64,000 nucleotides of DNA from Mobula birostris (Eukaryota): assembly GCF_030028105.1 (NCBI RefSeq), contig NC_092379.1:19879309-19943308 (forward strand), read 5' to 3'. Below the pieces are notes generated by a model. The model saw only the letters and a list, made by a program, of their open reading frames with translations, was not told the origin of the DNA and did not search any database. The position numbers and the translations under genes are program-made. Of this stretch, positions 4,121 to 51,894 are shown piece after piece; within the stretch, counting starts at the first letter, position 1, and every line of letters begins with the position of its first letter.

Positions 4121-5560
4121 CCAAGTTTCCATAGTAGACATAGTCATACTTTGTTGATCCCAGGGGACATTGGTTTTCGTTACAGTTGCACCATAATAAT
4201 TAAATAGTAGTAAAACCATAAATAATTAAATAGTAATATGTAAATTATGCCAGGAAATAAATCCAGGACCAGCCTATTGGCTCAGGGTGTCTGACCCTCC
4301 AAGGAAGGAGTTGTAAAGTTTGATGGCCACTGGCAGGAATGACTTTCTATGACGCTCTGTGCTGCATCTCGGAGGAATGAGTCTCTGGCTGAATGTACTC
4401 CTGTGCCCAACCAGTACATTATGTAGTGGATGGGAGACATTGTCCAAGATGGCATGCAACTTGGACAGCATCCTCTTTTCAGACACCACCGTCAGAGAGT
4501 CCAGTTCCATCCCCACAACATCACTGGCCTTACAAATGAGTTTGTTGATTCTGTTGGTGTCTGCTACCCTCAGCCTGCTGCCCCAGCACACAACAGCAAA
4601 CATGATAGCACTGGCCACCACGGACTCATAGAACATCCTCAGCATCATCCGACAGATGTTAAAGGACCTCAGTATCCTCAGGAAATAGAGATGACTCTGA
4701 CCCTTCTTGTTGACAGCCTCAGTGTTCTTTGACCAGTCCAGTTTATTGTCAATTCGTATCCCCAGGAATTTGTAATCCTCCACCATGTCCACACTGACCC
4801 CCTGGATGGAATCAGGGGTGACTGGTGCCTTAGCTCTCCTCAGGTCTGCCACCAGCTCCTTAGTCTTTTTCACATTAAGCTGCAGATAAGTCTGCTCACA
4901 CCATGTGACAATGTTTTCTACCGTAGCCCTGTACTCAGCCTCATCTCCCTTGCTGATGCATCTAACTATGGCAGAGTCATCTGAAAACCTCTGAAGATGA
5001 CAAGACTCTGTGCAGTAGTTGAAGTCCGAGGTGTAAATGGTGAAGAGAAAGGGAGACAAGACAGTCCCCTGTGGAGCCCCAGTGCTGCTGATCACTCTGT
5101 CGGACACACAATGTTGCAAGCACACAAACTGTGGTCTGCCAGTCAGGTAATCAAGAATCCATGGCACCAGGAAAGCATTCAGCTGCATCGCTGTCAGTTT
5201 TTCCCCCAGCAGAGCAGGGCGGATGGTGTTGAACGCACTTTAGAAGTCAAAAAACATGACCCTCACAGTGCTCGCTGGCTTGTCCAGGTGGGCATAGACA
5301 TGGTTCAGCAGGTAGGGGATGGCATCCTCAACTCCTAGTCAGGGCTGGTAGGCGAACTGGAGGGGATCTAAGTGTGGCCTAACCATAGGCTGGAGCAGCT
5401 CCAGAACAAGTCTCTCCAGGGTCTTCATGATGTGGGAGGTCAATGCTATTGGTCTGTAGTCATTGAGACTGCTGGGGCGTGGCTTCGGCACAGGGATGAG
5501 GCAGGATGTCTTGCACAGCACAGGAACCCTCCAGAGCCTCAGGCTCAGGTTGAAGACATA
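4121..5560 (-). mobile_element. 5'-truncated Rex1/Babar-type LINE inserted into the CR1
   Basis: 304-aa ORF 4274-5188 with TGAPQGTVLSPFLF and FSDDSAIV; LNDYRPIALTSHIMKTLERLV upstream; CR1 sequence continues on both sides. Confidence 0.85.
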
Positions 5561-10509: not shown

Positions 10510-13421
10510 TATATAAAGCCTGAAGGCTTTGTGTGTCAATGCCAGGAGCATTCGTAACAGGGTGGATGAATTGAAAGTGCAGATTGTTATTAATGATTAT
10601 GATATAGTTGGGATCACAGAGACATGGCTCCAGGGTGACCAAGGATGGGAGCTCAACGTTCAGGAATATTCAATATTCAGGAGGGATAGACATGAAAGAA
10701 AAGGAGGTGGGGTGGCTTTGCTGGTTAAAGAGGAGATTAACGCAATAGAAAGGAAGGACATAAACTGGGAAGATGTGGAATCGATATGGGTAGAGCTGCA
10801 TAACACTAAGAGGCAGAAAATACTGGTGGGAGTTGTGTACAGGCCACCTAACAGTAGTAGTGAGGTCGGGGATGGTATTAAACAGGAAATTAGAAATGTG
10901 TGCAATAAAGGAACAGCAGTTATAATGGGTGACTTCAATCTACATGTAGATTGGGTGAACCAAATTGGTAAAGGTGCTGAGGAAGAGGATTTCTTGGATT
11001 GTATGCGGGATGATTTTTTGAACCAACATGTCGAGGAACCAACTAGAGAGCAGGCTATTCTAGACTGAGTTTTGAGCAATGAGGAAGGGTTAATTAGCAA
11101 TCTTGTCGTGAGAGGCCCCTTGGGTAAGAGTGACCATAATATGGTGGAATTCTTCATTAAGATGGAGAGTGACATAGTTAATTCAGAAACAAAGGTTCTG
11201 AACTTAAAGAGGGGTAACTTTGAAGATATGAGACGTGAATTAGCTAAGATAGACTGGCAAATGACACTTAAAGGATTGACGGTGGATATGCAATGGCAAG
11301 CATTTAAAGATTGCATGGATGAACTACAACAATTGTTCATCCCAGTTTGACAAAAGAATAAATCAAGGAAGGTAGTGCACCCGTGGCTGACAAGGGAAAT
11401 TAGGGATAGTATCAATTCCAAAGAAGAAGCATACAAATTAGCCAGAAAAAGTGGCCCACCTGAGGACTGGGAGAAAATCAGAGTTCAGCAGAGGAGGACA
11501 AAGGGCTTAATCAGGAAGGGGAAAAAAGATTATGAGAGAAAACTGGCAGGGAACATAAAAACTGACTGTAAAAGCTTTTATAGATATGTAAAAAGGAAAA
11601 GACTGGTAAAGACAAATGTAGGTCCCCTACAGACAGAAACAGGTGAATTGATTATGGGGAGCAAGGACATGGCAGACCAATTGAGTAATTACTTTGGTTC
11701 TGTCTTCACTAAGGAGGACATAAATAATCTTCCAGAAATAGTAGGGGACAGGGGGTCCAGTGAGATGGAGAAACTGAGCGAAATACATGTTAGTAGAGAA
11801 GTGGTGTTAGGTAAATTGAAGGGATTAAAGGCAGACAAATCCCCAAGGCCAGATGGTCCGCATCCCAGAGTGCTTAAGGAAGTAGCCCAAGAAATAGTGG
11901 ATGCATTAGTGATAATTTTTCAAAACTCGTTAGATTCTGGACTAGTTCCTGAGGATTGGAGAGTCGCTAATGTAACCCCACTTTTTAAAAAAGGAGGGAG
12001 AGAGAAACCGGGGAATTATAGACCGGTTAGCCTAACGTCGGTGGTGGGGAAACTGCTGGAGCCAGTTATCAAAGATGTGATAACAGCACATTTGGAAAGC
12101 GGTGAAATCATCGGACAAAGTCAGCATGGATTTCTGAAAGGAAAATCATGTCTGACGAATCTCATAGAATTTTTTGAGGATGTAACTAGTAGAGTGGATA
12201 GGGGAGAACCAGTGGATGTGGTATATTTGGATTTTCAAAAGGCTTTTGACAAGGTCCCACACAGGAGATTAGTGTGCAAACTTAAAGCACACGGTATTGG
12301 GGCTAAGGTATTGATGTGGATAGAGAATTGGTTAGCAGACAGGAAGCAAAGAGTGGGAATAAACGGGACCTTTACAGAATGGCAGGCAGTGACTAGTGGG
12401 GTACCGCAAGGCTCAGTGCTGGGACCCCAGTTGTTTACAATATATATTAATGACTTGGATGAGGGAATTAAATGCAGCATCTCCAAGTTTGCGGATGACA
12501 CGAAGCTGGGCGGCAGTGTTAGCTGTGAGGAGGATGCTAAGAGGATGCAGGGTGACTTGGATAGGTTAGGTGAGTGGGCAAATTCATGGCAGATGCAATT
12601 TAATGTGGATAAATGTGAGGTTATCCATCTTGGTGGCAAAAATAGGAAAACAGATTATTATCTGAATGGTGGCCGATTAGGAAAAGGGGAGGTGCAACGA
12701 GACCTGGGTGTCATTATACACCAGTCATTGAAAGTGGGCATGCAGGTACAGCAGGCGGTGAAAAAGGCGAATGGTATGCTGGCATTTATAGCAAGAGGAT
12801 TCGAGTACAGGAGCAGGGAGGTACTACTGCAGTTGTACAAGGCCTTGGTGAGACCACACCTGGAGTATTGTGTGCAGTTTTGGACCCCTAATCTGAGGAA
12901 AAACATCCTTGCCATAGAGGGAGTACAAAGAAGGTTCACCAGATTGATTCCTGGGATGGCAGGACTTTCATATGAAGAAAGACTGGATGAACTAGGCTTG
13001 TACTCGTTGGAATTTAGAAGATTGAGGGGGGATCTGATTGAAAAGTATAAAATCTTAAAGGAATTGGACAGGCTAGATGCAGGAAGATTGTTCCCGATGT
13101 TGGGGAAGTCCAGAACGAGGGGTCACGGTTTGAGGATAAAGGTGAAGACTGAGATTAGGAAAAACTTCTTCACACAGAGAGTGATGAATCTGTGGAATTC
13201 TCTGCCACAGGAAACAGTTGAGGCCAGTTCATTGGCTATATTTAAGAGGGAGTTAGATATGGCCCTTGTGGTTATGGGGATCAGAGGGTATGGAGGGAAG
13301 GCTGGTGCAGGGTTCTGAGCTGGATGATCAGCCATGATCATAATAAATGGCGGTGCAGGCTCAAAGGACTGAATGGCCTACTCCTGTACCTATTTTCTAT
13401 GTTTCTATGTTTTCTATGTTT
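10510..13421 (+). mobile_element. CR1 LINE with near-complete ORF2 (APE + RT), two in-frame stops
   Basis: ORFs 10529-11068, 11072-11350 and 11375-13318 in one frame; FADDTKLGG; (TTCTATG)n tail ~13395-13421. Confidence 0.95.
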
Positions 13422-21604: not shown

Positions 21605-24600
21605 ACACCTCTGACAGCCTTCCACACTATCCACAACACCCCCAAACATTTTGTCATCAGCAAATTTACTAACCCATCCCTCTACTTCCTCATCTAGGTC
21701 ATTTATAAAAATCACGAATAGTAGTCGTCCCAGAGCAGATCCCTGAGGCACACCACTAGTCACCGGCCTCCATGCAGAATATGACCCATCTACAACCACT
21801 CTTTGCCTTCTGTGGGCAAGCCAGTTCTGGATCCACAAAGCAACGTCCCCTTGGTTCCCATGCCTCCTTACTTTCTCAATAAGCCTTGCATGGGGTACCT
21901 TATCAAATGCCTTTCTAAAATCCATATACACTACATCTACGGCTCTACCTTCATCAACGTGTTTAGTCACATCCTCAAAAAATTCAATCAGCTCGTAAGG
22001 CACAGCCTGCCCTTGACAAAGCCACGCTGACTATTCCTAATCATATTATACCTCTGCAATTGTTCATAAATCCTGCCTCTCAGGATCTTCTCCATCAACT
22101 TACCAACCTCTGAAGTAAGACTCACTGGCCTATAATTTCCTGGGCTATCACTATTCCTTTTCTTGAATAAGGGAATAACATCCGCAACCCTCCAATCCTC
22201 CAGAACCTCTCCCATCCTCATTGATGATGCAAAGATCTTTGCCAGGGTCTCAGCAATCTCCTCCCTCGCCTGGGGTACATCCTGTCCGGTCCCAGTGACT
22301 TATCCAACTTGATGTTTTCCAAAAGCTCCAGCACATCCTCTTCCTTAATATTTACATTCTCAAGCTTTTCAGTCCACTGCAAGTCATCCCTACAATCGCC
22401 AAGATCCTTTTCCGTAGTTAATACTGAAGCAAAGTATACATTAAGTACCTCCGCTATTTCCTCTGGTTCCATACACACTTTTCCATTGTCACACTTGATT
22501 GGTCCTATTCTCTCACGTCTTATCCTCTTGCTCTTCACATACTTGTAGAATGCCTTGGGGTTTTCCTTAATCCTGTCCGCCAATGCCTTCTCATGGCCCC
22601 TTCTGGCTTTCCTAATTTCATTCTTAAGCTCCTTCCTGCTAGCCTTATAATCTTCTAGATTCCTGTCATTACCTAGTTTTTTTTTTGAAACTCTCGTAAG
22701 CTCTTCTTTTCTTCTTGACTAGATTTACAACAGCTTTTGTATACCACGGATCTTGTACCCTACCATCCTTTCCATGTCTCATTGGAACGTACCAACTCAG
22801 AACCCCGCGCAAATATCCCCTGAACATTTGCCACCTTTCTTCCGTACGTTTCCCTGAGAATATCTGTTTCAAATTTATGCTTCCAAGTTCCTGCCTGATA
22901 GCCTCATATTTCCCCTTACTCCAATTAAACGCTTTCCTAACTTGTCTATTCCTATCCCTTTCTAATGCTATGGTAAAGGAGATAGAATTGTGATCACTAT
23001 CTCCAAAATGCTCTCCCATTGAGAGACCTGATACTTGACCAGGTTCATTTCTCAATACCAGATCAAGTACAGTCTCTCCTCTTGTAGGCTTATCTACATA
23101 TTGTGTCCAGAAACCATCCTAAACACACCTAACAAATTCTACCCCATCTAAGCCCCTTATTCTAGGGAGATGCCAATCAATATTTGGGAAATTAAAACCT
23201 CCCGCCACAACAACCCTATTATCATTACTCCTTTCCAGAATCTGTCTCCCTATCCATTCCTTGATGTCCCTGTTACTATTGGGTGGTCTATAAAAAACAC
23301 CCAGTAGTGTCATTGACCCCTTCCTCTTCCTAACTTCCACCCACAGAGACTCCGTAGACAACCTCTCCATGACTTCCTCCTTTTCTGCAGCCGTGACACT
23401 TCCTCTGATCAACAGTGCCACGCCCCCACCTCTTTTGTCTCCCTCCCTATCCTTTCTGAAACATCTAAAGCCTGACACTTACAGTAGCCATTCCTGCCCT
23501 GCACCATCCTAGTCTCTGTAATGGCAACAACATCACAGCTCCAAGTGCTGATCCACGCTCTAAGCTCATCTGCATTATTCATGATACTCCTCGCATTAAA
23601 ATAGACACATCTCAGAGCATCAGACTGAGCACGTCCCTTCTCTATCACCCGCCTATCCTCCCTCTCGCATTGTCTCCAAGCTTTCTCTATTTGTGAGCCA
23701 ACCTCCCTTTCCTCCGTCACTTCAGTTCGGTTCCCACCCCTCAGCAATTCTAGTTTAAACTCTCCCCAACAGCCTTAGCAAACCTTTCTGCCAGGATATT
23801 CATCCCCCTTGGATTCAAGTGAAACCTATCCTTTTTGTGCAGTCACAGAAGAAGAGATCCCAATGATCCAGATATCTGAATCCCTCCCCGCTGCTCCAAT
23901 CCCTCAGCCATGCATTTATCTTCCACCTCATTCTATTCCCATACTCACTGTCACGTGGCACAGGCCGTAATCCCGAGAACACTACCTTTGAGGTCCTGCT
24001 TCTCAACTTCTTTCCGAACTCCCTGTAGTCTGTTTTCAGGACCTCCTCCCTTTTCCCACCTATGTCGTTGGTACCAATATTTACCACAACCTCTGGCTGT
24101 TCTCCTTCCCGCTTCAAGATATCTTTGTCAAGGGCAGGTCATGCCTTACGAGCCTGATTGAATTTTTTGAGGATGTGACTAAATATTTTGATGAAGGAAG
24201 AGCAGTAGATGTAGTGTATATAGATTTCAGCAAGGCATTTGATAAGATACCCCATACTTAATGAGAAAGTAAGAAGGCATGGGATCCAAGGGGACATTGC
24301 TTTGTGGATCCAGAACTGGCTTGCCCACAGAAAGCAAAGCGTGGTTGTAGACGGGTCATATTCTGCATGGAGGTCGGTGACCAGTGGTGTGCCTCAGGGA
24401 TGCGTATGGGGACCCCTAGTCTTCGTGATTTTTATAAATGACCTGGGTGAAGTAGTAGAGGGATGGTTTAGTAAGTTTGCTGATGACACAAAGGTTGGAG
24501 GTGTTGTGGATAGTCTGGAGGGCTGTCAGAGGTTACAGCGGGACATTGATAGGATGCAAAACTGGGCTGAGAAGTGGCAGATGGAGTTCAACCCAGATAA

Positions 24601-26050
24601 GTGTGAAGTGGTTCATTTTGGTAGGTCAAATATGATGGGAGAATATAATATTAATGGTAAGACTCTTGGCAGTGTGGAGGATCTGAGGGATCTTGGGGTC
24701 CAAGTTCATAGGACACTCAAACAGCTGTGCAGGTTGACTCTGTGGTTAAGAAAGCATATGGTGCGTTGGCCTTCATCAATCATGGAATTGAGTTTAGGAG
24801 CCGAGAGGTAATGTTGCACCTATATAGGACCCAGGTCAGACCCCACTTGGAGTACTGTGCTCAGTTCTGGTCGCCTCACTACAGGAAGGATGTGGAAACC
24901 ATAGAAAGGGTGCAGAGGAGATTTACAAGGATGTCGCCTGGATTGGGGAGCATGCCTAATGAGACAGATTGAGTGAACACGGCCTTTTCTCCTTGGAGCG
25001 ATGGAGGATGAGGGGTAACCTGATAGAGGTGTATAAGATGATGAGAGGCATTGATCGTGTGGATAGTCAGAGGCTTTTTCCCGGGGTTGAAATGGCTGCC
25101 GCAAGAGGGCACAGGTTTAAGGTGCTTGGGAGTAGGTACAGAGGAGATGCCAGGGGTATTTTTTTTATATAAACGCAGAGAGTGGTGAGTGCATGGAATG
25201 GGCTGCCGGCAACGGTGGTGGAGGCAGATACGATAGGGTCTTTTAAGAAACTTTTGGATAGGTACATGGAGCTTAGAAAAATACAGGGCTATGGGTAACC
25301 CTAGTAATTTCTAAGGTCGGGACATGTTCGGCACAACTTTGTGGGCCAAAGGGCCTGTATTGTGCTGTAGGTTTTCTCTGTTTCTATGCTTCTATATCAT
25401 GGTCTCCATCAGAAACATTCTGGACCCTGGCACATGGGAGGCAAGCTACCATCCGTGTTTCTTTCCTATGACCACAGAATCACCTGTCTGACCCCTAACT
25501 AGAGTCCCCTGTCGCTGCTGCCATCCTCTTCCTTTCCTTACCCTTCTGAGCCACAGGGCCAGACTCTGTACCAGAGGCGCGACCACTGCTGCTTCCCCCA
25601 GGTAGGCTGTCCCCCGCAACAGTACTCAAGCAGGAATACTTACTGTTAAGGGGGACAGCCACTGAGGTACTCTCTAGTACCTGCTTTTTGCCCTTCCCTC
25701 TCCTGACTTTTACCCACTTCTCTGTCTCCTGTGGTCCCGGGTTGACTACCTGCCTATATCTCCTCTCTATCACCTCCTCACTCTCCCTGACCAGATGAAG
25801 GTAATCGAGCTGCAGCTCCAGTTCCCTAATGCGGTCTCTAAGGTGCTGCAGCCTGACGCACCTGGTGCAGATGTGGTCGTCTGGGAGGCTGAGAGTCTCC
25901 AGGGCCTCCCACATCAGACACCAAGCACAGAAAACCCGCCTCACACACATACTCTGTCTTTATTTTAAACAGATAGCCTACCTGGTCTCCACCCTTTATC
26001 ACCAAAGCCTCATTGAGCCAAAGCCTTCCTACTCTGTCTCCCACTACTCT
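21605..26050 (-). mobile_element. CR1 LINE with ORF1 (zinc finger, coiled coil, SGNH esterase) and ORF2 5' half; 3' end missing
   Basis: CAWCLMW...CTRCVRLQHLRDRIRELELQL; GDS; VVVNIGTND; WDL; then APE and RT motifs, stopping abruptly at the ERV-B LTR. Confidence 0.85.
24124..25394 (+). mobile_element. 5'-truncated CR1 inserted antisense into ORF1 of the preceding CR1
   Basis: RT motifs in ORFs 24239-24811 and 24727-24972; (TTCTATG)-like tail; host ORF1 resumes on both sides. Confidence 0.85.
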
Positions 26051-33450: not shown

Positions 33451-33526
33451 TCTACACTCAGGGCTATCTACAGTAGTCAATTAACCCAACAACAAGCATG
33501 TCTTTGGTGTGTGGGAGGAAAACCTG

Positions 33527-33790
33527 TTGCAATGTGACATATTCATCTGAAGAGCTCCTGTAGCCTCAGGAACTCCTGGCACAATGGACTCCTCCTGCGC
33601 ACTGTTTCACCAGAACTGTCCAGCAACTCGTCTGTCTGTCTGTAACACTGACACCCAGTGGCTTGAGGTTGCTATTGCAGCAGCCAGTTTGACTGAAGCC
33701 TCAATACCTTCTTTCAAAGGTGCTCCTTTGACCTCCAGTAGTTACAGGTTGTCATTGCAAGGTACCAAGTGCTTTCCATCAAGTCAACTT
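33527..33790 (+). pseudogene. Unit G copy 1 (candidate decayed Ig CH exon)
   Basis: One of six similar copies; ends GCHCKVP (YxCxV-like). Confidence 0.4.
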
Positions 33791-34494
33791 CAATCCAGAC
33801 ACAAGAGACTGCAGATGCTGGAATCCAGACAAACACACAATCTGCTGGAGAAACACAGCGATTTCAGCAGCATTGATGGCTGGAAAGAAACTGTTGAACC
33901 CCTGCATCAGGTCAGTTCAAATTAGCACCAGGGTTACCACAGACAGAATGTAATAATCACTGAAGCAAAATAAACCTGCTCAGGTTACATTGCAGAGAAA
34001 AAATACTCTTGAAAACACCGGACAGACAATATCCATGGTGCATCAGTGGTGGAGGGAATGAAATGGAATGTAGCTGGGCAGACCTTATACATCACCAAGT
34101 GTGCCAACTCATGAGATGCCAATGATCATGTCGACACAGCCGTAAAATAGCAAAAACAGCAAAAATAAGCTAAAGATTGGTCTGATGAAAAACAGTTCAG
34201 ATCAAAACCATATTGAAGCTACTGTCTAAAAGCACAGGGTTCCAGCTGGCTGCCTTCATTCAAATGTTTATCATTGAGGTCTATCCATGGACACAAATGA
34301 GCCTCTGTAATCCTTAATGAAGAACAGGGGCTAATTCAAAAGAGAGTCTGATTCAGATTGGAAAGTGGGAGAGCGGAAACAGTGAGACAGGCAGTGTTGT
34401 GTGACGAACAGAAATCACAGGCAAACTGTATGAAATAAAATGATGTGACTGGCAGGTTTCGAAACCCTGGCAGCTTTATGCAGGGGAAGCTGCA

Positions 34495-38466: not shown

Positions 38467-38842
38467 CCGTCTGTCTTTATCTCTGTGTCCGGTGTGGAAA
38501 GGGTTAACTATGATACCATGAAACAAAGGGTGAAAGTGGTCCTAATGTCTCTCTGATACAGCACCCTGGCTCTGAGATCTTCAGTTTTATTTACCAGGGA
38601 CTGTACAATTGCCAGCAAGGTAGTCGGTATTGGGAATTGAAAACCTCATTTTCTTAAACACACCATCAGACCAGGACGTTGAATCCACTTTCTCCAGTGG
38701 CTTCCTAAAGGGGCAGTGTGCCAACCACAGTCTGGCCTATTTTCTCTCAGTTTTAAGCAGCAATAAGTTGTTCAATTGTATCAAAACTTCACCACTGACT
38801 GTACACATCTTAGACGTAGATGTGGTTCTCAGCAATTGCAGG
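38467..38842 (-). pseudogene. Heavily decayed Ig CH-like exon (IgNAR C4 / IgW equivalent, tentative)
   Basis: Good acceptor TTCTTGTTTTAG ~120 bp after the previous donor; fragments (A)C, EVLIQ, LVNKLKIS, TFTLC...LSTPDTEIK in shifting frames. Confidence 0.35.
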
Positions 38843-38965
38843 CTAAAACAAGAATATTTGATGATCACACCAGGGCTGCACCATTATTCAATATTGAACT
38901 GGCCTGGCAGAGTTCACAGCACAATGTAAACAATTTCATGAACGGGGTGAGTTCCAGGACCCTAC

Positions 38966-39272
38966 CTTGGACGTTCTCCACTTGCTTCTTGATACAGGTA
39001 TTGGAGGGCGGATAAATCACTGTACAGCTGAAGACTGATTCTGTCTTCCAATCCTGCAAACTCACGGTCAGGAAGTGTCTGGCACTGAAAGTCCACCCCT
39101 GGTTGGTGTAGCACTGGTGTTGGAGGTGATGATGGTGCTGCCTTTCTCCCAGGTGACATCCAATTGGTCCGAGTGGAATCCAGAGACCACACACTCCAGT
39201 GTGGCCATTTTCCTATTCTTCGTCTCTTCCTAGGATGGAAGCTGTCAGGATTTTGAATAAAGACAAACAATT
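38966..39272 (-). pseudogene. Immunoglobulin heavy-chain constant (C1-set) exon, IgW/IgNAR type
   Basis: Acceptor TTCTAATCCCCAG, donor G/GTAGGG, phase 1 at both ends; ELFVFIQNP / LPS*EETKNRKMATLECVVSGFHSDQLDVTWEK...TP / NQGWTFSARHFLTVSLQDWKTESVFSCTVIYPPSNTCIKKQVENVQ; both Cys and the Trp present; 1 stop, 2 frameshifts. Confidence 0.88.
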
Positions 39273-39889
39273 CTGGGGATTAGAAATGGAAAACGTCAGA
39301 ATCTTACTGGAGATATTCTTATCGGTTGTTGAATCAGCCCCTGTTCTTCCCTGTAATAAAGATTACAGTGGCTCATTTATATCCATGAAAAGCCTTCAAT
39401 GACAAATAATTGGCCAAATTCAGCCAGTAGCAACCCCGTGCTTTTACACAGTAGCTTCAAGATGGATTTGACCTGAACTCTCGTTCATGGGTCTTATCTT
39501 CAGTAATTTTGTTTGGCTGCTTTTGCTATTTCACAGCTGTGTCGACATGATCAGAGACATCTCATGAGTTGGCCACTTGTATGTTCTGCCCAGCCACATT
39601 CGATTTCACTCCCTCCATGAGTGATGCATGGTGAATATTGTCTGTCCAGAATTTTCAACAGTATTGTTTTCTCTACAATGTAACCTGAGCAGGTTTTATC
39701 TTGCTTTGGTGATAGTTGCATTTTGCCTATGGTAGCCCAGATACTAATTTGTACTGACCTGATGCAGGGATTCAACAGTTTCTTTCCAGCCATCAATGCT
39801 GCTGAAGTTGCCGTGTTTCTCCAGCACAGATTGTGCGTTGCTCTGGATTCCAGCATCTGCAGTCTCTTGTGTTTGGAATGAAGTTGACT

Positions 39890-40140
39890 TGACTGAAGTA
39901 TTTGGTACCTTGTAGTGACAACCTGCAGCCACTGGGGGTCAGAGGAACACCTCTGAAATAAGGTATTGAGACTTCAAACCGGCTGCTGTAATAGCACCCT
40001 CAAACCACTGGGTGTCAGTGTTACAGATTAGTCAGAGGGGGTTGCTGGACTGCTTGGGTGAAACAGTGCACAGGAGGAGTCCATTGTGCCAGGAGGGCCT
40101 GAGACTACAGGAGCTCTTCAGAGGAATACGTCACATTGCA
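39890..40140 (-). pseudogene. Unit G copy 3, ~600 bp upstream of the Ig CH exon on the same strand
   Basis: Reverse complement of 33527-33790. Confidence 0.45.
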
Positions 40141-40199
40141 ACGCAGTTTCCTCCCACACCTCAAAGACCTGCTTGTCAGTAGGTTAATTGGCTACCGTA

Positions 40200-41130
40200 A
40201 ATTGCCCTCAGTGATAGAGTCCTACAGCATGGAAACAGCACAAGTCGTCCATGCTGACCAAGATGAAAATCCAAGCTAGGCCCCATTTCCCAGTGTTTGA
40301 CCCATAACCATCCAAAATGTTCCACTCCGTGTATCTGTCCAACTGCCTTTGAAAAGTTATTTACTTAACTCAAACACTTCTTCTGGTAACATATTCTATA
40401 GGTTCCACCATTTCTGTTTAAAGAATCCTTTAAATTCCTGTTAAATCTTTCCCCTCTCACTGAAACCTATGCCCTCTAGCTCTTGGTTCTCCATCTTAAT
40501 AAAAGACTGTGGACATTTACCACAGCTATGCCCCTCCTGATTTTACACATCTTTATAAAAGTGCCTCTGAGACTCCTGTATTTCAAGCAATATAGCCTTA
40601 ACCTGTCGAACCTCTCCCCATAACATGGACCCTTGAGTCCTGGCAACATCCTTATAAATCTCTTCTGCACTCATTCAGTTTAATTGCCTCTTTCCTGCAG
40701 CTTGCTGACTGAAGTGCAGCCTCACAGATGCCTTGTACAACCGCACTGTGACCTCCCAACATTCACACTCAATGTTCTGTCTAATGAAGGCCGGCATGCC
40801 AAAAGCCTTTCACCATCCTAACTACTTTTGATTCCATGTCCTTTTAATCCACAACACTGTCCAGGACCCTGCCGTTTACCATGAAAGTCCAACCTTGGTT
40901 TGACTTTACAAATTACGACACCTCACACTTATCTGAATTAAAATCCAGTTGCCACTCCTTACTCAGCTAATCAACATACACCTGTAATGCTTGATAATCT
41001 TTCACAAACTTCACTTTACCACTTGTTTTAATATCGTCTGTGAACGTACTGACCATGTTTTGTACATTCGTATCCAAATCTTTGATGCAGATGACAAAAA
41101 AAATGGCCAAGCACTGACCCCTGAAGTACA
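40200..41130 (-). mobile_element. Old CR1/L2-type LINE 3' remnant (duplicated at ~44880-45730 and ~51230-52800)
   Basis: MQKRFIRMLPGLKG..Y.ER.DRL.LY.L.YR.LRG. Confidence 0.65.
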
Positions 41131-41479: not shown

Positions 41480-42960
41480 TTAACATTATTTCTGTATCAC
41501 TGACAGACACAGGGATGTGAGAAGTATACTCGTCACACAGTATGTAGTACTCACACCATCTCCACAGCAAGAACAGACAAAATGTACAGATAACCTGCTG
41601 ATGACATCATCTCATTTGTTAGTGATCCTTTCAAAGACCAGATAATCAGGATGTAAGAGGGAAGGAAACAACAGAAAAATTAAAATTATATATATACACA
41701 CACTGTGTGTCTGTGTGTGTGTGTGTGTGTTCAAAACCAATTATGCCACAACAGAGTATCATGTCTAATTCAGAACCCAATATCAGTGGGATGAAAAAGC
41801 ATTAGAAAGTATTAGAATGATTCCAGGGATGATGGTCATTACTAATGTGGAAAATGGAGCAGCTGGAATTGCTTTGTTTGGAAAGGAAGATGTGGAAGGA
41901 CATCCATGAAGGCATTTGTAATCACAGAGGCTCAAAATGGACGAAGAGAGAAATTGTCATTGGTGAATGTAGAGGGTGTAGAATGACAAAAGGATCAGAG
42001 TCACATCAGGAAGTAATGATTTATGCAGTGAGAGGAACGTGTCTATAAATCACTGGTATGCCTGGTAGAGGAAGCTCATCCAATTGTGGTATTCAGAAGG
42101 GAAATGGAAAATTGAGAGGAAGACAAAATGCAGAATAATGGGAGATAAGACAGGGAAACACATTGGTTAGCTCTTGATTACCACCAGCTCAGACTTAATA
42201 GGTGAATCAATTTTCTTCCACACTATTCTGTTAGTGATTCTCCGTGCTTAAGCTATCTGTCCAGTTGCTATCACATCCTATCATTCCAAAACCCTTAATG
42301 TTCCTTGCCCCGAAGACAATGATATCTATCAGGTGTCAGAAACATGCTGGCTCCATCTTACAATCAGGCACAGACCCATTAGACTTTCAATTTTTCCAAA
42401 ACAGCCTTTGGTAGAGACATCCAGCTCATTTTCACAGTTAATCCAAACGAAATAGAAAAGATTCTCCTTCCTGATGATCCTTCTAGAATGTGCATGTTCT
42501 TTCAGCTGACTTCCTCCTGAACCCCGCACGGATTGGCAACATCAACGTCCAACCTTCTTTATTCGAGACTGAAACAACATTGGGACAACCAGATTTACGG
42601 GATTCTCACGTTCCGACTACTGAACTCCACTTCACGACTTCTTTGTCAACAGCAGTTGTTATGGGGGAAAGAAAAACAACTGGAAAAGCTGTGAACATTA
42701 CGACTAGTGACACTGTCTGTCCTGTCAGCACCGCCCCTACAGCACCAGCAACACTGTGTGTGAGTACCACATCAGTAACATGGTCTCTGGTATCAGCACC
42801 GACCGCTCTTATCAACGGCCGGGAACGCGACTGCGCGGTGGAAACCCAACGGCCGAGGCTCAGGCGGGTCGATCGTCAAGCAGTGATTGGATGATCGGCC
42901 GTCACGTGGGTGTGTCTATTGGCAGCGAGCTCGAGCGTGGGTTGTCGAGGTTCTCACTAG
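41480..42960 (+). repeat. Segmental-duplication unit U, copy 3 (contains antisense RTE remnant ~42340-42815)
   Basis: Reverse complement matches 14.7-16.7 kb, 29.0-31.8 kb and 6625-6861. Confidence 0.75.
41696..41730. repeat. (TG)n microsatellite
   Basis: Directly visible. Confidence 0.85.
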
Positions 42961-43400
42961 AGGGCGGGGTGACATCTTTGGTTGCCGGCAAAAAAAAAGG
43001 ACGATTCCAGAAGAGAGTCGAGTTGAGGCGCGCGGGTAGCGGCAAGCTCTGATTGGAGGATCGGCCTGAAGGTGACGTATGGCTGCTCCGGCTACCGCTT
43101 CTTTAACCGCTGATTGAAGGCACAGTCTCCCGGTGTCCGCGCGGACTTGGAGGAAGTAAGCACGCGGCAAATGGTTATAGCGCGGGAAAAAGCGAGGCTC
43201 CGATTGGTTGAGGGGTAAAGACGTGTGACGAGGAGCCGAGTGCGTGAATCCCTCCAACGGCGCAGCCGCAGCGGCGGGAGAAAGGAGACGCCAACGCTGA
43301 GTTGTCGTGTCCAGTAACAAATCGTTGGTGACTGAAGAAGAGGGCTTCGCCGGAGGTGTGCACAAAAGCTAGCGGGACAACGCATTGCAGGGTAAGGGGA
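42790..43400 (+). promoter_or_regulatory. CpG-island-like promoter with candidate non-coding first exon (donor at 43392)
   Basis: Dense CpG in an otherwise depleted window; ATTGG at 42886, 42918, 43052, 43203; CACGTG 42903; GGGCGGGG 42962; TGACGT 43073; AGGAAGT 43151; GCGCGGGAAA 43180; CAGG/GTAAGG. Confidence 0.65.
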
Positions 43401-44629: not shown

Positions 44630-44865
44630 CAGCTGGTTTGATCTGAACAATGTGTTACCCTGCAATAATAACTACAACCACTAGGGGTGAGAGGAACACC
44701 TCCAAATGTTGAGCCTTCAGTTAAATTGGCTGCTGTTTTGTTAACCAACAGTCTCTGGCTGTCAGTATAACAGTCAGGCAAAAAGACACTGCTGGATGGT
44801 GTGGGTGAAACAGTGCACAGGAGGATTCCACTCTTCAGATAATACATCACATTGAAATATGACAT
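44630..44865 (-). pseudogene. Unit G copy 4 (best C-terminal motif)
   Basis: ORF 44542-44865: ILLCTVSPTPSSSV...GVPLTPSGCSYYCRVTH. Confidence 0.45.
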
Positions 44866-45729
44866 CCTTCTTCAAAATTCATGCTTGTTGGTAGGTTATT
44901 ACCACTTTAAACTGTGCTTGTATTTGTAGATTCAGAGGGTCAAAGGCATGGAAACTGGTCCTTCGTCCCAACTCCTCCATGCTGACCAAGATGCCCATCC
45001 AAGCTGGTCAGATTGACAGCATTTTGTGGGAACTTTCCTTATCCATTGCCCTCTTGATTTTATGCATCTCTACAAAATCTCCACTCAATTTCCTACAAGT
45101 CGAAGATTTTCACCAGAGCTGAGGAAGTTAGAGATTTAATAAACAGGTACAGTCGCAGGAAAATATCCCATCTCACTGTTACGTTGACTCTCCACAGTGA
45201 CTGCGACTCCAAGATACAAAGTTATATTTTCTGTAATTTATATATTCATTCCAAGGAAAGTCCTAGCCCAGACAATGTCTCCCGGTAATTCAGTCATGGC
45301 AACATCCTTGTAAATCATTTCTGTACCCTTTTCTCATTAATAGCATCTTTCCACCAGGAGATTGAATAAAAACAGAACACAATACTCCAAATACAACCTC
45401 ACTGGTATCGTCTACCGTTTCAACATTTATACGCAACGCTCTGACTGACGAAGACCAGCATAGCAAAAGGCTTCTTCACCACCCTGTCTACCTGTGACTC
45501 CACTTTCAGTGAACCATGTACTTGAACTCCCTCTGTTCCACATCACTCTCCAGGGCCCTTTCATTCACTGTGAAATTCCTATCTTGGTTTAACTTTTGAA
45601 AACATTACACCTTGCACTTCCTTGAATGGAACTCCATCTGCCACACTTAAGCCCATTTATTCAGCTGAACAAGGACCCGCCGTAATTTTGATAACCTTCT
45701 TCACTCTTCACTTTACTGCTAATTTTTTG

Positions 45730-49860: not shown

Positions 49861-49869
49861 AGTTGGGAT

Positions 49870-50085
49870 GGGAGCCACTAGGGGTCAGAGGAATACAACC
49901 AAATATTGAGGCTTCAGTTAAACTGACTGCTGCAATAATAACCAACAGTCTCTGGGTGTAGGTGTAACAGTCAGGTACAGAGACGCTGTTGGACAGTGTG
50001 GGTGAAACAGTGCACGGGAGGATTCCATTGTGCCAGGAGGTCCTGAGACTACAGGGGCTCTTCAGATGAATATGTCACAGTGAAA
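49870..50085 (-). pseudogene. Unit G copy 5 (3' end missing)
   Basis: SWHNGILPCTVSPTLSNSVSVPDC... Confidence 0.4.
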
Positions 50086-50619
50086 GTAACAGACAGGGAA
50101 AGGGCAGGGTTTTCATTCACCAGTTAGTATGGCACTGATAGGACGTTTTATACAATCCCTGCTTTCTCTCACTGTCTTTTTCTGTCAATGCATATTACCT
50201 TGCACTAATTTGCATTTATAGGGTGTTTTCAGTAGAGCTTTGATCTGAGCTCTTGTTCATTGGACTCTAATTTTGCTATTTTACTGTTGTTTTGACTCGA
50301 TCATTGACATCCATGTGTTGACACATTTGAAGATGTATATGGTCTACTCACTGGCACTCCATTTCATTCCCTCCACTACTGATGTACAATGTATATTGCC
50401 TGTGCAGTGCTTGCAAGAGGTGTTACTACTGATTTGCAACATGAGTAGGTTTTCTTTACTTCAGTAATTTTATTCTCTCTGTTGTAACCCAGATGCTCAT
50501 GGACTGTCCTCATTTGGAATTCAACAGTTTCTTTCCATTGATGGTGCTCAGCCTGCCAGTAGATCGCGTGTGGCTCCAGATCCCAGCATCTGCTGACTCT
50601 TGTGTCTGGACTGAAGTCA

Positions 50620-51035
50620 ATTTGACTGGAAGCACTTGTTCCCTCACAGTGATAAACTGCAACCACTGAGCATCAGAGGAACACCTCCAAATATTTGGGC
50701 TTCAGTCAAACTTATTGTTGAAATACTATCGGACATCCACTGGGTGTCAGTGTATCAGTCAACACTCACAACACACTGGAGGAACTCAGCAGGTCGGACA
50801 GCTTCCGTGGAAAAGATCGATCGACATTTCCACGGATGCTGCCCGACCTGCTGAGTTCCTCCAGCGTGTTGTGAGTGTTGCTTTGACCCTAGCATCTGCA
50901 GATTATTTTGTGTTTAGTGTATCAGTCAGACTGAGAGTGTGGAGAATGTGGGTGGAACAGTGCACAGGAGGATTCCAGAGCATCAGGAGTTCCCGAGTCT
51001 GCAGGAGCTCTTCAGCTAAATATGTCACATTCAAA
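50620..51035 (-). pseudogene. Unit G copy 6, interrupted by a hairpin element
   Basis: Ends VAVYHCEGTSASSQ; collinear with the other copies once 50761-50915 is removed. Confidence 0.4.
50761..50915. mobile_element. Fold-back (hairpin) retroposon derived from a Penelope terminus
   Basis: 54-bp arms 50760-50813 and 50827-50880 with 3 mismatches; 12-bp TSD AGTGTATCAGTC (50749-50760, 50916-50927). Confidence 0.85.
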
Positions 51036-51894
51036 TGTGTTTCCCTCCACATCCCAAATACATGGGTAACTACAGTCAAGATGGCACAAGCGTCAATGGT
51101 GCCTGAGTGATATCTTCTGCATGGTCCATGAAACCATTTCTTTCATTTCTTTTACGTCTTTTTCTTTTAAATGTGGTTCTGGTATTGTAGCTGTGAGCTT
51201 CAGTTTGATGGTGTGTTTTTGGGTCAATTGAGTGATCTAGTGCTTTGCTTTCTCCAAAATCAATCCAGTTACCTTGCCAACATTTTGTGGGAACTTACCC
51301 TGTCCATGGTCCTCTTGATTTTGTGTACCTCCATAAAATCACCACTCAGTCTCCTACAAGTCAAAGTGCTTCACCAGGGCTGAGGAAGTTAGTGATTGTT
51401 AGAGATTTAATAAACAAGTACAGCAGCAGGAACAGTCCCACCTCACTTACGCTGACTCTCCAAAGTGACTGATTCCAGGATATTAATTATGTTCGGCAAT
51501 TTTTCTATTCACTCCAAGGAAAGTACTATTCTAGACAACCTCACCTTTTAACTCAAATCATGGCAACATCCTTGTAAATCTTTCCTGCACTCTTTCCAGA
51601 ATAATAACATCTTTTCACCAAGAGGATGAATAAAATTTGAACACAGTACTCCAAATGCAATCTCACCAGCGCTTTCTACAATTGTACCATGTGCTACCAA
51701 CTTTATACATACTGTTCTGAATGATGAAGGCCAGCATACCAAAAGACTTCTTCATCACCCTGTCTACCTGTTACTGCACTAAGTGAAACATGTACTTGAA
51801 CTTCAAGGTCCCTCTGTTCCACAATTCTCTCCAGGGCCCTGTTGTCCACTGTGAAAGTCCTTTCTTCGTTTAACTTTCCAAAGTGACACACCTC

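What the first reader, a model, noticed from the sequence alone, without database searches (positions are those of the whole stretch)
38966..39272. Hidden IgW/IgNAR-type heavy-chain constant pseudo-exon
It is missed by the ORF track because it is split over three frames, yet it has intact phase-1 splice sites and the full C1-set signature (ATLEC-x13-W...TFS...L.V...DWK...FSC.V..PPS). It most resembles IgNAR C3 and the homologous long-form IgW domain (from memory). It is the only clearly host-gene-derived sequence in the window. Known: cartilaginous fish have many Ig clusters, including pseudoclusters. No V, D or J with RSS was found here, so this is an orphan constant-region fragment.
Basis: partly seen in the sequence, partly recalled or inferred. 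Interest (0 to 1): 0.75.

Follow-up and report, generated by a model that had tools for sequence, protein, structure and literature searches.

The report
Dead IgW antibody exon fragment
This is a real but dead 449-base scrap of a ray IgW antibody gene, in which the start of one constant-domain exon is fused to most of the next one; it is an ordinary gene fossil lying among jumping-gene debris near the working IgW genes.

Summary
Observation confirmed. The minus strand of 38966-39272 encodes an immunoglobulin C1-set constant domain, broken over three reading frames.

- **Domain evidence:** Pfam C1-set scores E 5.5e-6 and 5.7e-3 on the two pieces. My own Ig-C profile scores 6e-13 and 6e-12, and nothing else in the window scores.
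- **Isotype:** it is IgW, not IgNAR. It is up to 84% identical to C4 domains of Mobula IgW, against 47-54% for shark IgW C4 and 32-36% for IgNAR C3. In the tree it sits inside the Mobula/Hemitrygon IgW C4 clade (98/96).
- **New point, a chimera:** the first 30 nt (39272-39243) and 45 nt of upstream intron come from a C3 exon. The other 277 nt and about 97 nt of downstream intron come from a C4 exon.
- **Other damage:** a 10-nt deletion at 39100|39101 and a CAG-to-TAG stop at 39230-39232. The lengths add up: 321-34+30-10 = 307.
- **Splice sites:** both sit exactly where expressed IgW transcripts splice.
- **Context:** the window holds no V, D, J or other Ig exon. Unchecked scan notes place IgW genes 112-132 kb away.
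- **Expression:** no sign of transcription, on weak evidence.

An ordinary pseudogene fragment; low interest.

The parts
39273..39317 (-). Remnant of the intron that precedes IgW C3 exons, with a pyrimidine tract and an AG acceptor at 39274-39273.
   Evidence: Contigs of functional paralogues match 39243-39304/39317 with 8 differences, then run on unlike the window beyond 39317 (records 23 and 24, loose ends at 39317). An RNA contig joins the C2 end (..SKMVSMRYAD) exactly at 39273|39272.
39243..39272 (-). First 30 nt of an IgW C3 exon, reading (E)LFVFIQNPD in phase 1.
   Evidence: Mobula IgW C3 domains begin ELSVFIQNPDIEEMWI. Contigs matching this part continue before 39243 as ..EEMWIDKTA, which is the C3 reading.
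38966..39242 (-). 277 nt of an IgW C4 exon, running from the LPPxQEE motif to the ..VENVQ donor. It lacks the exon's first 34 nt.
   Evidence: Identity to Mobula IgW C4 is 81% (piece A) and 88% (piece B). Expressed paralogues diverge upstream of 39231 into ..SPKVRLLPPP, the C4 start. A full C4 exon is 321 nt, by the skate locus L001 and the 106-residue domain.
39230..39232 (-). In-frame TAG stop where functional copies have CAG (Gln of PPxQEE).
   Evidence: Paralogue contigs join ...CCACCTC onto AG at 39231-39230, so they read CAG there. The one other DNA contig that crosses this place reads G on the + strand at 39232, which also gives CAG.
39100..39101 (-). Site of a 10-nt deletion that removes most of T-A-L-E of the TALEQ motif and shifts the frame.
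   Evidence: A paralogue contig (X13) has GCTCCAGAGC (+ strand) put in behind 39100, and the loose ends at 39101 in X1, X14 and X15 carry the same letters. On the minus strand this reads ..GCT CTG GAG C.. (tables 4, 7, 8).
38869..38965 (-). Remnant of the intron that follows IgW C4 exons, with a GT donor at 38965-38964.
   Evidence: One contig from an RNA-labelled run matches 38869-38995 with 16 differences and 8 gapped letters, and has 58 letters that do not fit below 38869 (record 17). An RNA contig joins the TM1 exon (..CTDLTGEEG) exactly at 38966|38965.

Best explanation
This is a non-functional 449-nt fragment (38869-39317, minus strand) of an IgW heavy-chain constant region from a manta/devil ray (Mobula), most likely M. 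birostris.

Shown: it reads as one 307-nt exon but is built from two.
- The acceptor, 45 nt of intron and the first 30 nt come from a C3 exon.
- The remaining 277 nt and about 97 nt of downstream intron come from a C4 exon. C4 is the domain homologous to IgNAR C3.
- Functional genes carry the rest of C3, the C3-C4 intron and the first 34 nt of C4 between the two retained parts.
- The copy also has a 10-nt deletion in the TALEQ loop and a Gln-to-stop change.
- It has replacements in conserved motifs: FYP to FHS, and C.V.H to C.V.Y.

Inferred:
- One illegitimate deletion of roughly 0.8-1 kb (size taken by analogy with the skate gene) removed that stretch.
- It cannot encode a domain and does nothing.
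- The fused piece was later copied at least once, because a second, diverged copy of the same junction exists.
- It probably reached this place as part of a small duplicated segment rather than by decay of a whole V-D-J-C cluster on the spot.
For: - **C1-set hits on both pieces:**
- **Best relatives among 1.84 billion proteins:** Mobula birostris and M. hypostoma heavy chains with repeated C3-C4 modules.
- **Domain assignment:** named IgW of Carcharhinus, Triakis, Squalus and Ginglymostoma and named IgNAR fix the domain as IgW C4, equal to IgNAR C3.
- **Trees:** they place it inside a Mobula/Hemitrygon IgW C4 clade. Support is 98/96 in the careful tree and 92 in the quick tree, with the IgNAR C3 domains in a separate group. 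Its end branch is 0.14 against a median of 0.031.
- **Identity:** 84% to Mobula C4, 47-54% to shark IgW C4, 32-36% to IgNAR C3.
- **Contigs laid at 80% likeness:**
  - C4 paralogues break off at 39231 into the C4 start.
  - C3 paralogues match 39243-39317 and then continue as C3.
  - The paralogue that crosses 39100|39101 carries 10 more letters there, and others show the same letters as loose ends.
  - One other DNA contig, at single-copy depth, crosses the junction with 4 substitutions and a 1-nt gap.
- **Arithmetic:** 321-34+30-10 = 307.
- **No other Ig in the window:** shown by tblastn with V-bearing IgW and IgNAR proteins and by a profile scan of all six frames.
- **Homology does not resume:** the functional intron's continuation beyond 39317 is found nowhere else in the window.
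Against: - I could not read the DNA of the functional Mobula IgW genes, because the file was too large. The junction is therefore inferred from 30-letter loose-end consensus sequences and from protein sequences. The breakpoint is uncertain by a few bases: a blunt joint at 39243|39242, or a GAC microhomology plus a 3-nt loss.
- The species is inferred from the best protein hits and from earlier scan notes.
- Absence of transcription rests on contigs, which drop rare variants. Even the DNA run lacks an exact contig over 38984-39176.
- How the fragment arrived here is inference only.
Confidence: 0.9

Rival explanations
1. The fragment is the last relic of a complete IgW V-D-J-C cluster that decayed at this spot. 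Every other exon was removed by deletions and transposon insertions.
For: Earlier scan notes (unchecked) place IgW genes 112-132 kb beyond the window on the same piece. Cartilaginous fish carry many clusters, some of them broken. The window is packed with LINE debris and repeats.
Against: Only 449 nt are Ig-derived. No other Ig exon or V lies within 38.9 kb on one side or 24.7 kb on the other. Intron homology stops sharply at about 39317 and 38869 and does not resume. The surviving exon is still 84% identical in protein, so its neighbours could not have faded by point mutation alone. The same fusion also exists in a second copy, so it has been copied as a unit.
Confidence: 0.25
2. It is an IgNAR C3 pseudo-exon, a trace of IgNAR in a ray.
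For: IgNAR C3 is the homologue of IgW C4. A solved IgNAR constant domain is among the hits for both pieces, and a skate IgNAR exists (P0163).
Against: Identity to IgNAR C3 is 32-36%, against 84% to Mobula IgW C4. The four IgNAR C3 domains, including the skate one, form their own group away from it.
Confidence: 0.01
3. The exon is alive. Its intact splice sites let it be spliced into a transcript, for example one starting at the CpG island noted at 42790-43400.
For: Both splice sites are intact and sit exactly where functional IgW exons are spliced.
Against: It has a stop codon and two frame shifts. The three RNA-labelled runs have no depth over the unique flank 39324-39400, although one of them shows very deep IgW signal. 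At the copy-specific letters 39057, 39160, 39161, 39172 and 39175, every laid contig carries the paralogues' letter. This is weak evidence, because these are contigs and the DNA run is also blank at those places.
Confidence: 0.03

Closest known systems
IgW (IgD-orthologous) heavy-chain C4 exon of batoids, as in Mobula birostris XP_072126131.1 and M. hypostoma XP_062916197.1
   Same: It is 81-88% identical over the two readable pieces. It has the same donor position and phase and the same motifs: PPxQEE, ATLEC, WEKG, TFSARHFLTVS, FSCTV, PPSN and KKQV.NVQ.
   Different: It lacks the first 34 nt of C4 and carries 30 nt of C3 in their place. It also has a 10-nt deletion, a TAG stop, and replaced conserved residues (FYP to FHS, H to Y). 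It stands alone, without V, D, J, other C exons or membrane exons.
IgNAR C3 domain (Triakis, Heterodontus, Chiloscyllium, Okamejei)
   Same: It is the homologous domain position, a C1-set fold with a similar LLPPS..E and TALEQ..TFS layout.
   Different: Identity is only 32-36%, and it forms a separate clade in the tree.
Broken copies among cartilaginous-fish Ig gene clusters (my own knowledge; PMC5192425 records a pseudogene locus only for nurse shark sigma-2 light chains)
   Same: It is a non-functional copy of an antibody gene, in a genome whose antibody genes come as many small clusters.
   Different: It is not a pseudocluster. It is a single fused exon fragment of 449 nt, present in at least two diverged copies.

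Membership tests
Immunoglobulin C1-set domain (PF07654) | A profile match above the curated cut-off. | tested here: met
   Piece A scores 27.1 bits against a cut-off of 21, E 5.5e-6. Piece B scores 17.4 bits and covers profile positions 56-82. The two halves cover profile positions 11-49 and 56-82.
Immunoglobulin C1-set domain (PF07654) | A B-strand Cys, a C-strand Trp and an F-strand Cys at the standard spacing. | tested here: met
   ATLEC, then VTW 13 residues on, and FSCTV are all present in the translation.
IgW heavy chain, C4 exon | Groups with named IgW C4 domains rather than other Ig domains or isotypes. | tested here: met
   It sits inside the batoid IgW C4 clade. The IgNAR C3 domains group apart from it, and the IgW C2 and C6 and IgNAR C1 and C5 domains lie further out.
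IgW heavy chain, C4 exon | Exon borders and phase of a functional C4 exon. | tested here: not met
   The donor is at the functional C4 position, where an RNA contig splices to TM1 at 38966|38965. The acceptor and the first 30 nt are those of a C3 exon. The piece is therefore a C3/C4 fusion, not a whole C4 exon.
IgW heavy chain, C4 exon | An open reading frame through the exon. | tested here: not met
   There is a TAG at 39230-39232, a frame shift at the fusion point and a 10-nt deletion at 39100|39101.
Cartilaginous-fish Ig cluster (V-D-J-C unit) | V, D and J segments with RSS, and the other C and membrane exons, lying nearby. | tested here: not met
   tblastn with V-bearing IgW and IgNAR proteins and a six-frame profile scan find nothing else in the 64 kb. 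RSS motifs were not searched for separately.
IgNAR heavy chain, C3 exon | Groups with IgNAR C3 domains. | tested here: not met
   Identity is 32-36%, and the IgNAR C3 domains form a separate group.

The most novel reading that the evidence does not exclude
The C3/C4 fusion fragment may be more than debris. It could be a small mobile or repeatedly copied unit: two diverged copies about 0.8 Mb apart at the edge of the IgW region. Such a unit could still be used, for example as a gene-conversion donor for the many near-identical IgW C4 exons, or as an exon of a non-coding transcript through its intact splice sites.
Probability: 0.04. Interest if true: 0.4.

Novelty: new member of a known kind. 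Interest (0 to 1): 0.15.

Why it matters
It matters little in itself. Dead fragments of antibody genes are expected in a genome that carries many antibody gene clusters.

It has three modest uses:
- It is a clean worked example of a hidden exon recovered from three frames.
- Each lesion is explained: one exon-to-exon deletion, one 10-nt deletion and one stop.
- It marks past rearrangement at the edge of the Mobula IgW region.

Annotators should mask it, so that it is not joined to neighbouring gene models.

Tried and rejected
- **DNA of the functional Mobula IgW gene:** I used the skate locus L001 for exon borders and loose ends of laid contigs for the Mobula sequence instead.
- **Fuzzy regex search for the intron continuation:** it timed out. 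A short-word BLAST then found only chance matches of 8-13 nt.
- **UrIg2 as the source:** it was the top solved-structure hit for piece A, at only about 13 bits per domain. I rejected it given 81-88% identity to IgW.
- **MHC, TCR or light-chain origin:** none appear among the listed hits, and none among the ten hits I looked up by name.
- **In-register C3 x C4 unequal crossover:** rejected, because the two breakpoints are 11 nt out of register relative to the B-strand Cys codon (my own reading of the sequences).
- **A copy of the exon elsewhere in the window:** none by BLASTN.
- **The neighbouring repeat 'Unit G' as a fossil Ig exon:** it gives no signal with an Ig-C profile (E above 0.7).
- **Synonymous against non-synonymous differences from the paralogues:** about 6 to 9 codons among the positions listed. 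The list is too few and too incomplete to test constraint.

Full report
**The observation**

The finding lies on the minus strand. Read from 39272 down to 38966 (307 nt), the sequence translates in three successive frames:
- (E)LFVFIQNPD
- LPS*EETKNRKMATLECVVSGFHSDQLDVTWEKGSTIITSNTSATP
- QGWTFSARHFLTVSLQDWKTESVFSCTVIYPPSNTCIKKQVENVQ

A pyrimidine tract ending in CAG precedes 39272, and G|GTAGGG follows 38966. Pfam C1-set matches both readable pieces: E 5.5e-6 on profile positions 11-49, and E 5.7e-3 on positions 56-82. Against solved structures, both pieces hit heavy-chain constant domains: antibody Fab and whole-IgG heavy chains, IgE, IgA, IgM, IgY, IgNAR and UrIg2. No MHC, TCR or light-chain entry is listed.

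**What it is related to**

A HMMER search of 1.84 billion representative proteins with the 46-residue piece A gave 99 hits. The best was a 1428-residue protein with seven matching stretches, at E 8.7e-105. An exact look-up names it an uncharacterized protein of Mobula birostris (XP_072126131.1), on a 148.7-Mb contig. Its cluster mates include a 'titin-like' protein of M. hypostoma. Further hits are heavy-chain-like proteins of other rays and skates, 'splenic IgW short secretory form-like' of Hemitrygon, and IgNAR of Triakis.

Single-domain BLASTP identity to the Mobula proteins is 81% for piece A and 88% for piece B. The Mobula protein ends in a typical heavy-chain membrane anchor. It contains a repeated 207-residue pair of domains:
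- X begins ELSVFIQNPDIEEMWI.
- Y begins VEIKSPKVTLLPPSQEETKNRKTATLEC and ends KKQVKNVQ.

A second search brought in named IgW of Carcharhinus, Triakis, Squalus and Ginglymostoma, and named IgNAR of Heterodontus, Chiloscyllium and Okamejei. Mapping domain Y on these shows that Y is IgW C4, which equals IgNAR C3, and that X is IgW C3.

**Isotype**

I built a tree of 76 C4-type and outgroup domains and a careful tree of 49 batoid domains. Both place the conceptual translation, with X at the breaks, inside a clade of Mobula and Hemitrygon IgW C4 repeats. Support is 98/96 in the careful tree. The four IgNAR C3 domains form their own group in the 76-row tree.

| Compared with | Identity |
|---|---|
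| Best Mobula IgW C4 | 84% |
| Hemitrygon IgW C4 | up to 80% |
| Shark IgW C4 | 47-54% |
| IgNAR C3 | 32-36% |
| Other IgW and IgNAR domains (IgW C2, C6; IgNAR C1, C5) | 24-32% |

The fragment's end branch is 0.14, against a median of 0.031. It has lost conserved residues: FYP became FHS, and the His after the F-strand Cys became Tyr. Both fit decay without constraint. Its position inside the clade is unresolved, so I cannot date it against the Mobula-Hemitrygon split.

**Why three frames: a fusion of two exons**

The skate IgW locus L001 gives the exon layout. C3 and C4 are separate exons, and C4 is 106 codons plus split codons, or 321 nt. The first ten codons of the pseudo-exon match the start of C3, not of C4.

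I laid contigs of one DNA run and three RNA-labelled runs of the same organism on 38700-39400 at 80% likeness. This showed five things.

1. Contigs of functional C4 paralogues fit from 38966 up to 39231. They then run on as a sequence that reads ..SPKVRLLPPP on the minus strand, which is the normal C4 start.
2. Other contigs fit 39243-39304/39317 and then continue below 39243 as ..EEMWIDKTA, the normal C3 reading. So 39243-39272 and about 45 nt of intron above it are C3-derived.
3. A paralogue contig that crosses 39100|39101 has ten more letters there, and loose ends in the other runs carry the same letters. On the minus strand they read ..GCT CTG GAG C.., which restores T-A-L-E-Q.
4. Functional copies read CAG where this copy has TAG (39230-39232).
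5. RNA contigs splice C2 onto the position 39273|39272 and splice TM1 onto 38966|38965. Both splice sites of the fragment are therefore at genuine exon borders, one of C3 and one of C4.

The lengths close exactly: 321 - 34 (lost C4 start) + 30 (C3 start) - 10 = 307. The joint lies at 39243|39242, give or take a few bases. The two breakpoints are 11 nt out of register relative to the Cys codon. I therefore read it as an illegitimate deletion rather than an unequal crossover; that step is inference. The deleted stretch is the rest of C3, the intron and 34 nt of C4.

**Extent and surroundings**

Homology to functional genes stops near 39317 and near 38869. A repeat occupies 39329-40213, with an inverted copy at 33455-34339. 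The continuation of the functional intron is not found anywhere else in the window.

tblastn with seven full IgW and IgNAR proteins, six of them V-bearing, finds no other Ig sequence in the 64 kb. A six-frame scan with a profile of 59 Ig C domains agrees: the two pieces score 6e-13 and 6e-12, and everything else is above 0.7. Three of the ten large ORFs that I scanned are LINE-type reverse transcriptase remnants. The fragment is thus orphan within the window.

Earlier notes of this scan, which I did not check, place IgW genes 112 kb, 132 kb and 315 kb beyond the window's end. They also place another 307-nt 'orphan IgW/IgNAR-like pseudo-exon' 778 kb before its start.

In agreement with that last note, one further DNA contig crosses the C3/C4 joint. 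It is at single-copy depth, with four substitutions and a 1-nt gap, and it reads CAG instead of TAG. The fusion therefore predates a duplication, and the stop arose later in this copy. I could not show that this contig is the copy 778 kb away.

Runs of a second organism hold 40-44% of the sampled words of the 1.1-kb stretch 38600-39700. I read this as the same locus in a close relative, which would make the fragment older than that species split. This is inference.

**Expression**

One RNA-labelled run shows very deep IgW signal. All three have no depth over the unique flank 39324-39400. At the copy-specific letters 39057, 39160, 39161, 39172 and 39175, all laid contigs carry the paralogues' letter.

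These are contigs, which drop rare variants. The DNA run is equally blank over 38984-39176. So this is absence of evidence, not proof of silence.

**Comparison with what is known**

IgW is organised in many clusters. Nurse shark clusters have six to eight C exons, and several spliced forms are known (PMC5192425). IgM, IgW and IgNAR clusters are linked in elasmobranchs, and duplication of two adjacent C exons in IgW and IgNAR is established (PMC12227049). From my own knowledge, broken copies among shark and ray antibody gene clusters are nothing unusual; PMC5192425 itself records a pseudogene locus only for nurse shark sigma-2 light chains. A dead exon fragment near IgW genes is therefore a new instance of a known kind of thing. 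The only unusual details are the exon-to-exon fusion and its second copy.

**Verdict**

The stretch is an IgW C3/C4 fusion pseudo-exon. It is not IgNAR, it is orphan within the window, and it is most likely silent. Interest is low.

Noticed in passing
Not in the window: proteins P0001, P0112, P0119, P0003, P0114 (Mobula); P0002 (Chiloscyllium); P0121 (Pristis); P0004 (Leucoraja): Predicted IgW heavy chains carry many tandem C3-C4 modules. There are six in the M. birostris 1428-residue membrane form and in the 1623-residue M. hypostoma protein, three in a short-tailed Mobula form that ends after its third C4, four in a bamboo shark, three in a sawfish and two in a skate. The review I read gives six to eight C exons per nurse shark cluster. 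Twelve or more C domains may not be described, but gene models can merge clusters.
   Followed up: partly
window 39329-40213 and 33455-34339; also 44670-45136, 49867-50098, 50655-51048: A repeat of about 0.9 kb abuts the fragment, 11 nt beyond the end of Ig homology, and has an inverted copy 5 kb away. Related pieces lie further on. My Ig-C profile scan and tblastn give no signal there.
   Followed up: partly
window 39232-39276, seen in DNA run X1: A second genomic copy of the same C3/C4 fusion appears as one contig at single-copy depth. It has 4 substitutions and a 1-nt gap in 45 nt and keeps CAG where this copy has TAG. It is probably the 307-nt pseudo-exon that the scan noted 778 kb before the window.
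   Followed up: partly
window 4274-5188 (-), 11375-13318 (+), 24239-24811 (+): Open reading frames with reverse-transcriptase domains (RVT_1, E 1e-10 to 1e-33). These are LINE-type retrotransposon remnants, in a window that also holds several repeat families.
   Followed up: partly
window 38748-38867: A repeat family seen in about ten DNA contigs that share differences from the window. It abuts the downstream edge of the Ig-derived fragment. I did not identify it.
   Followed up: no
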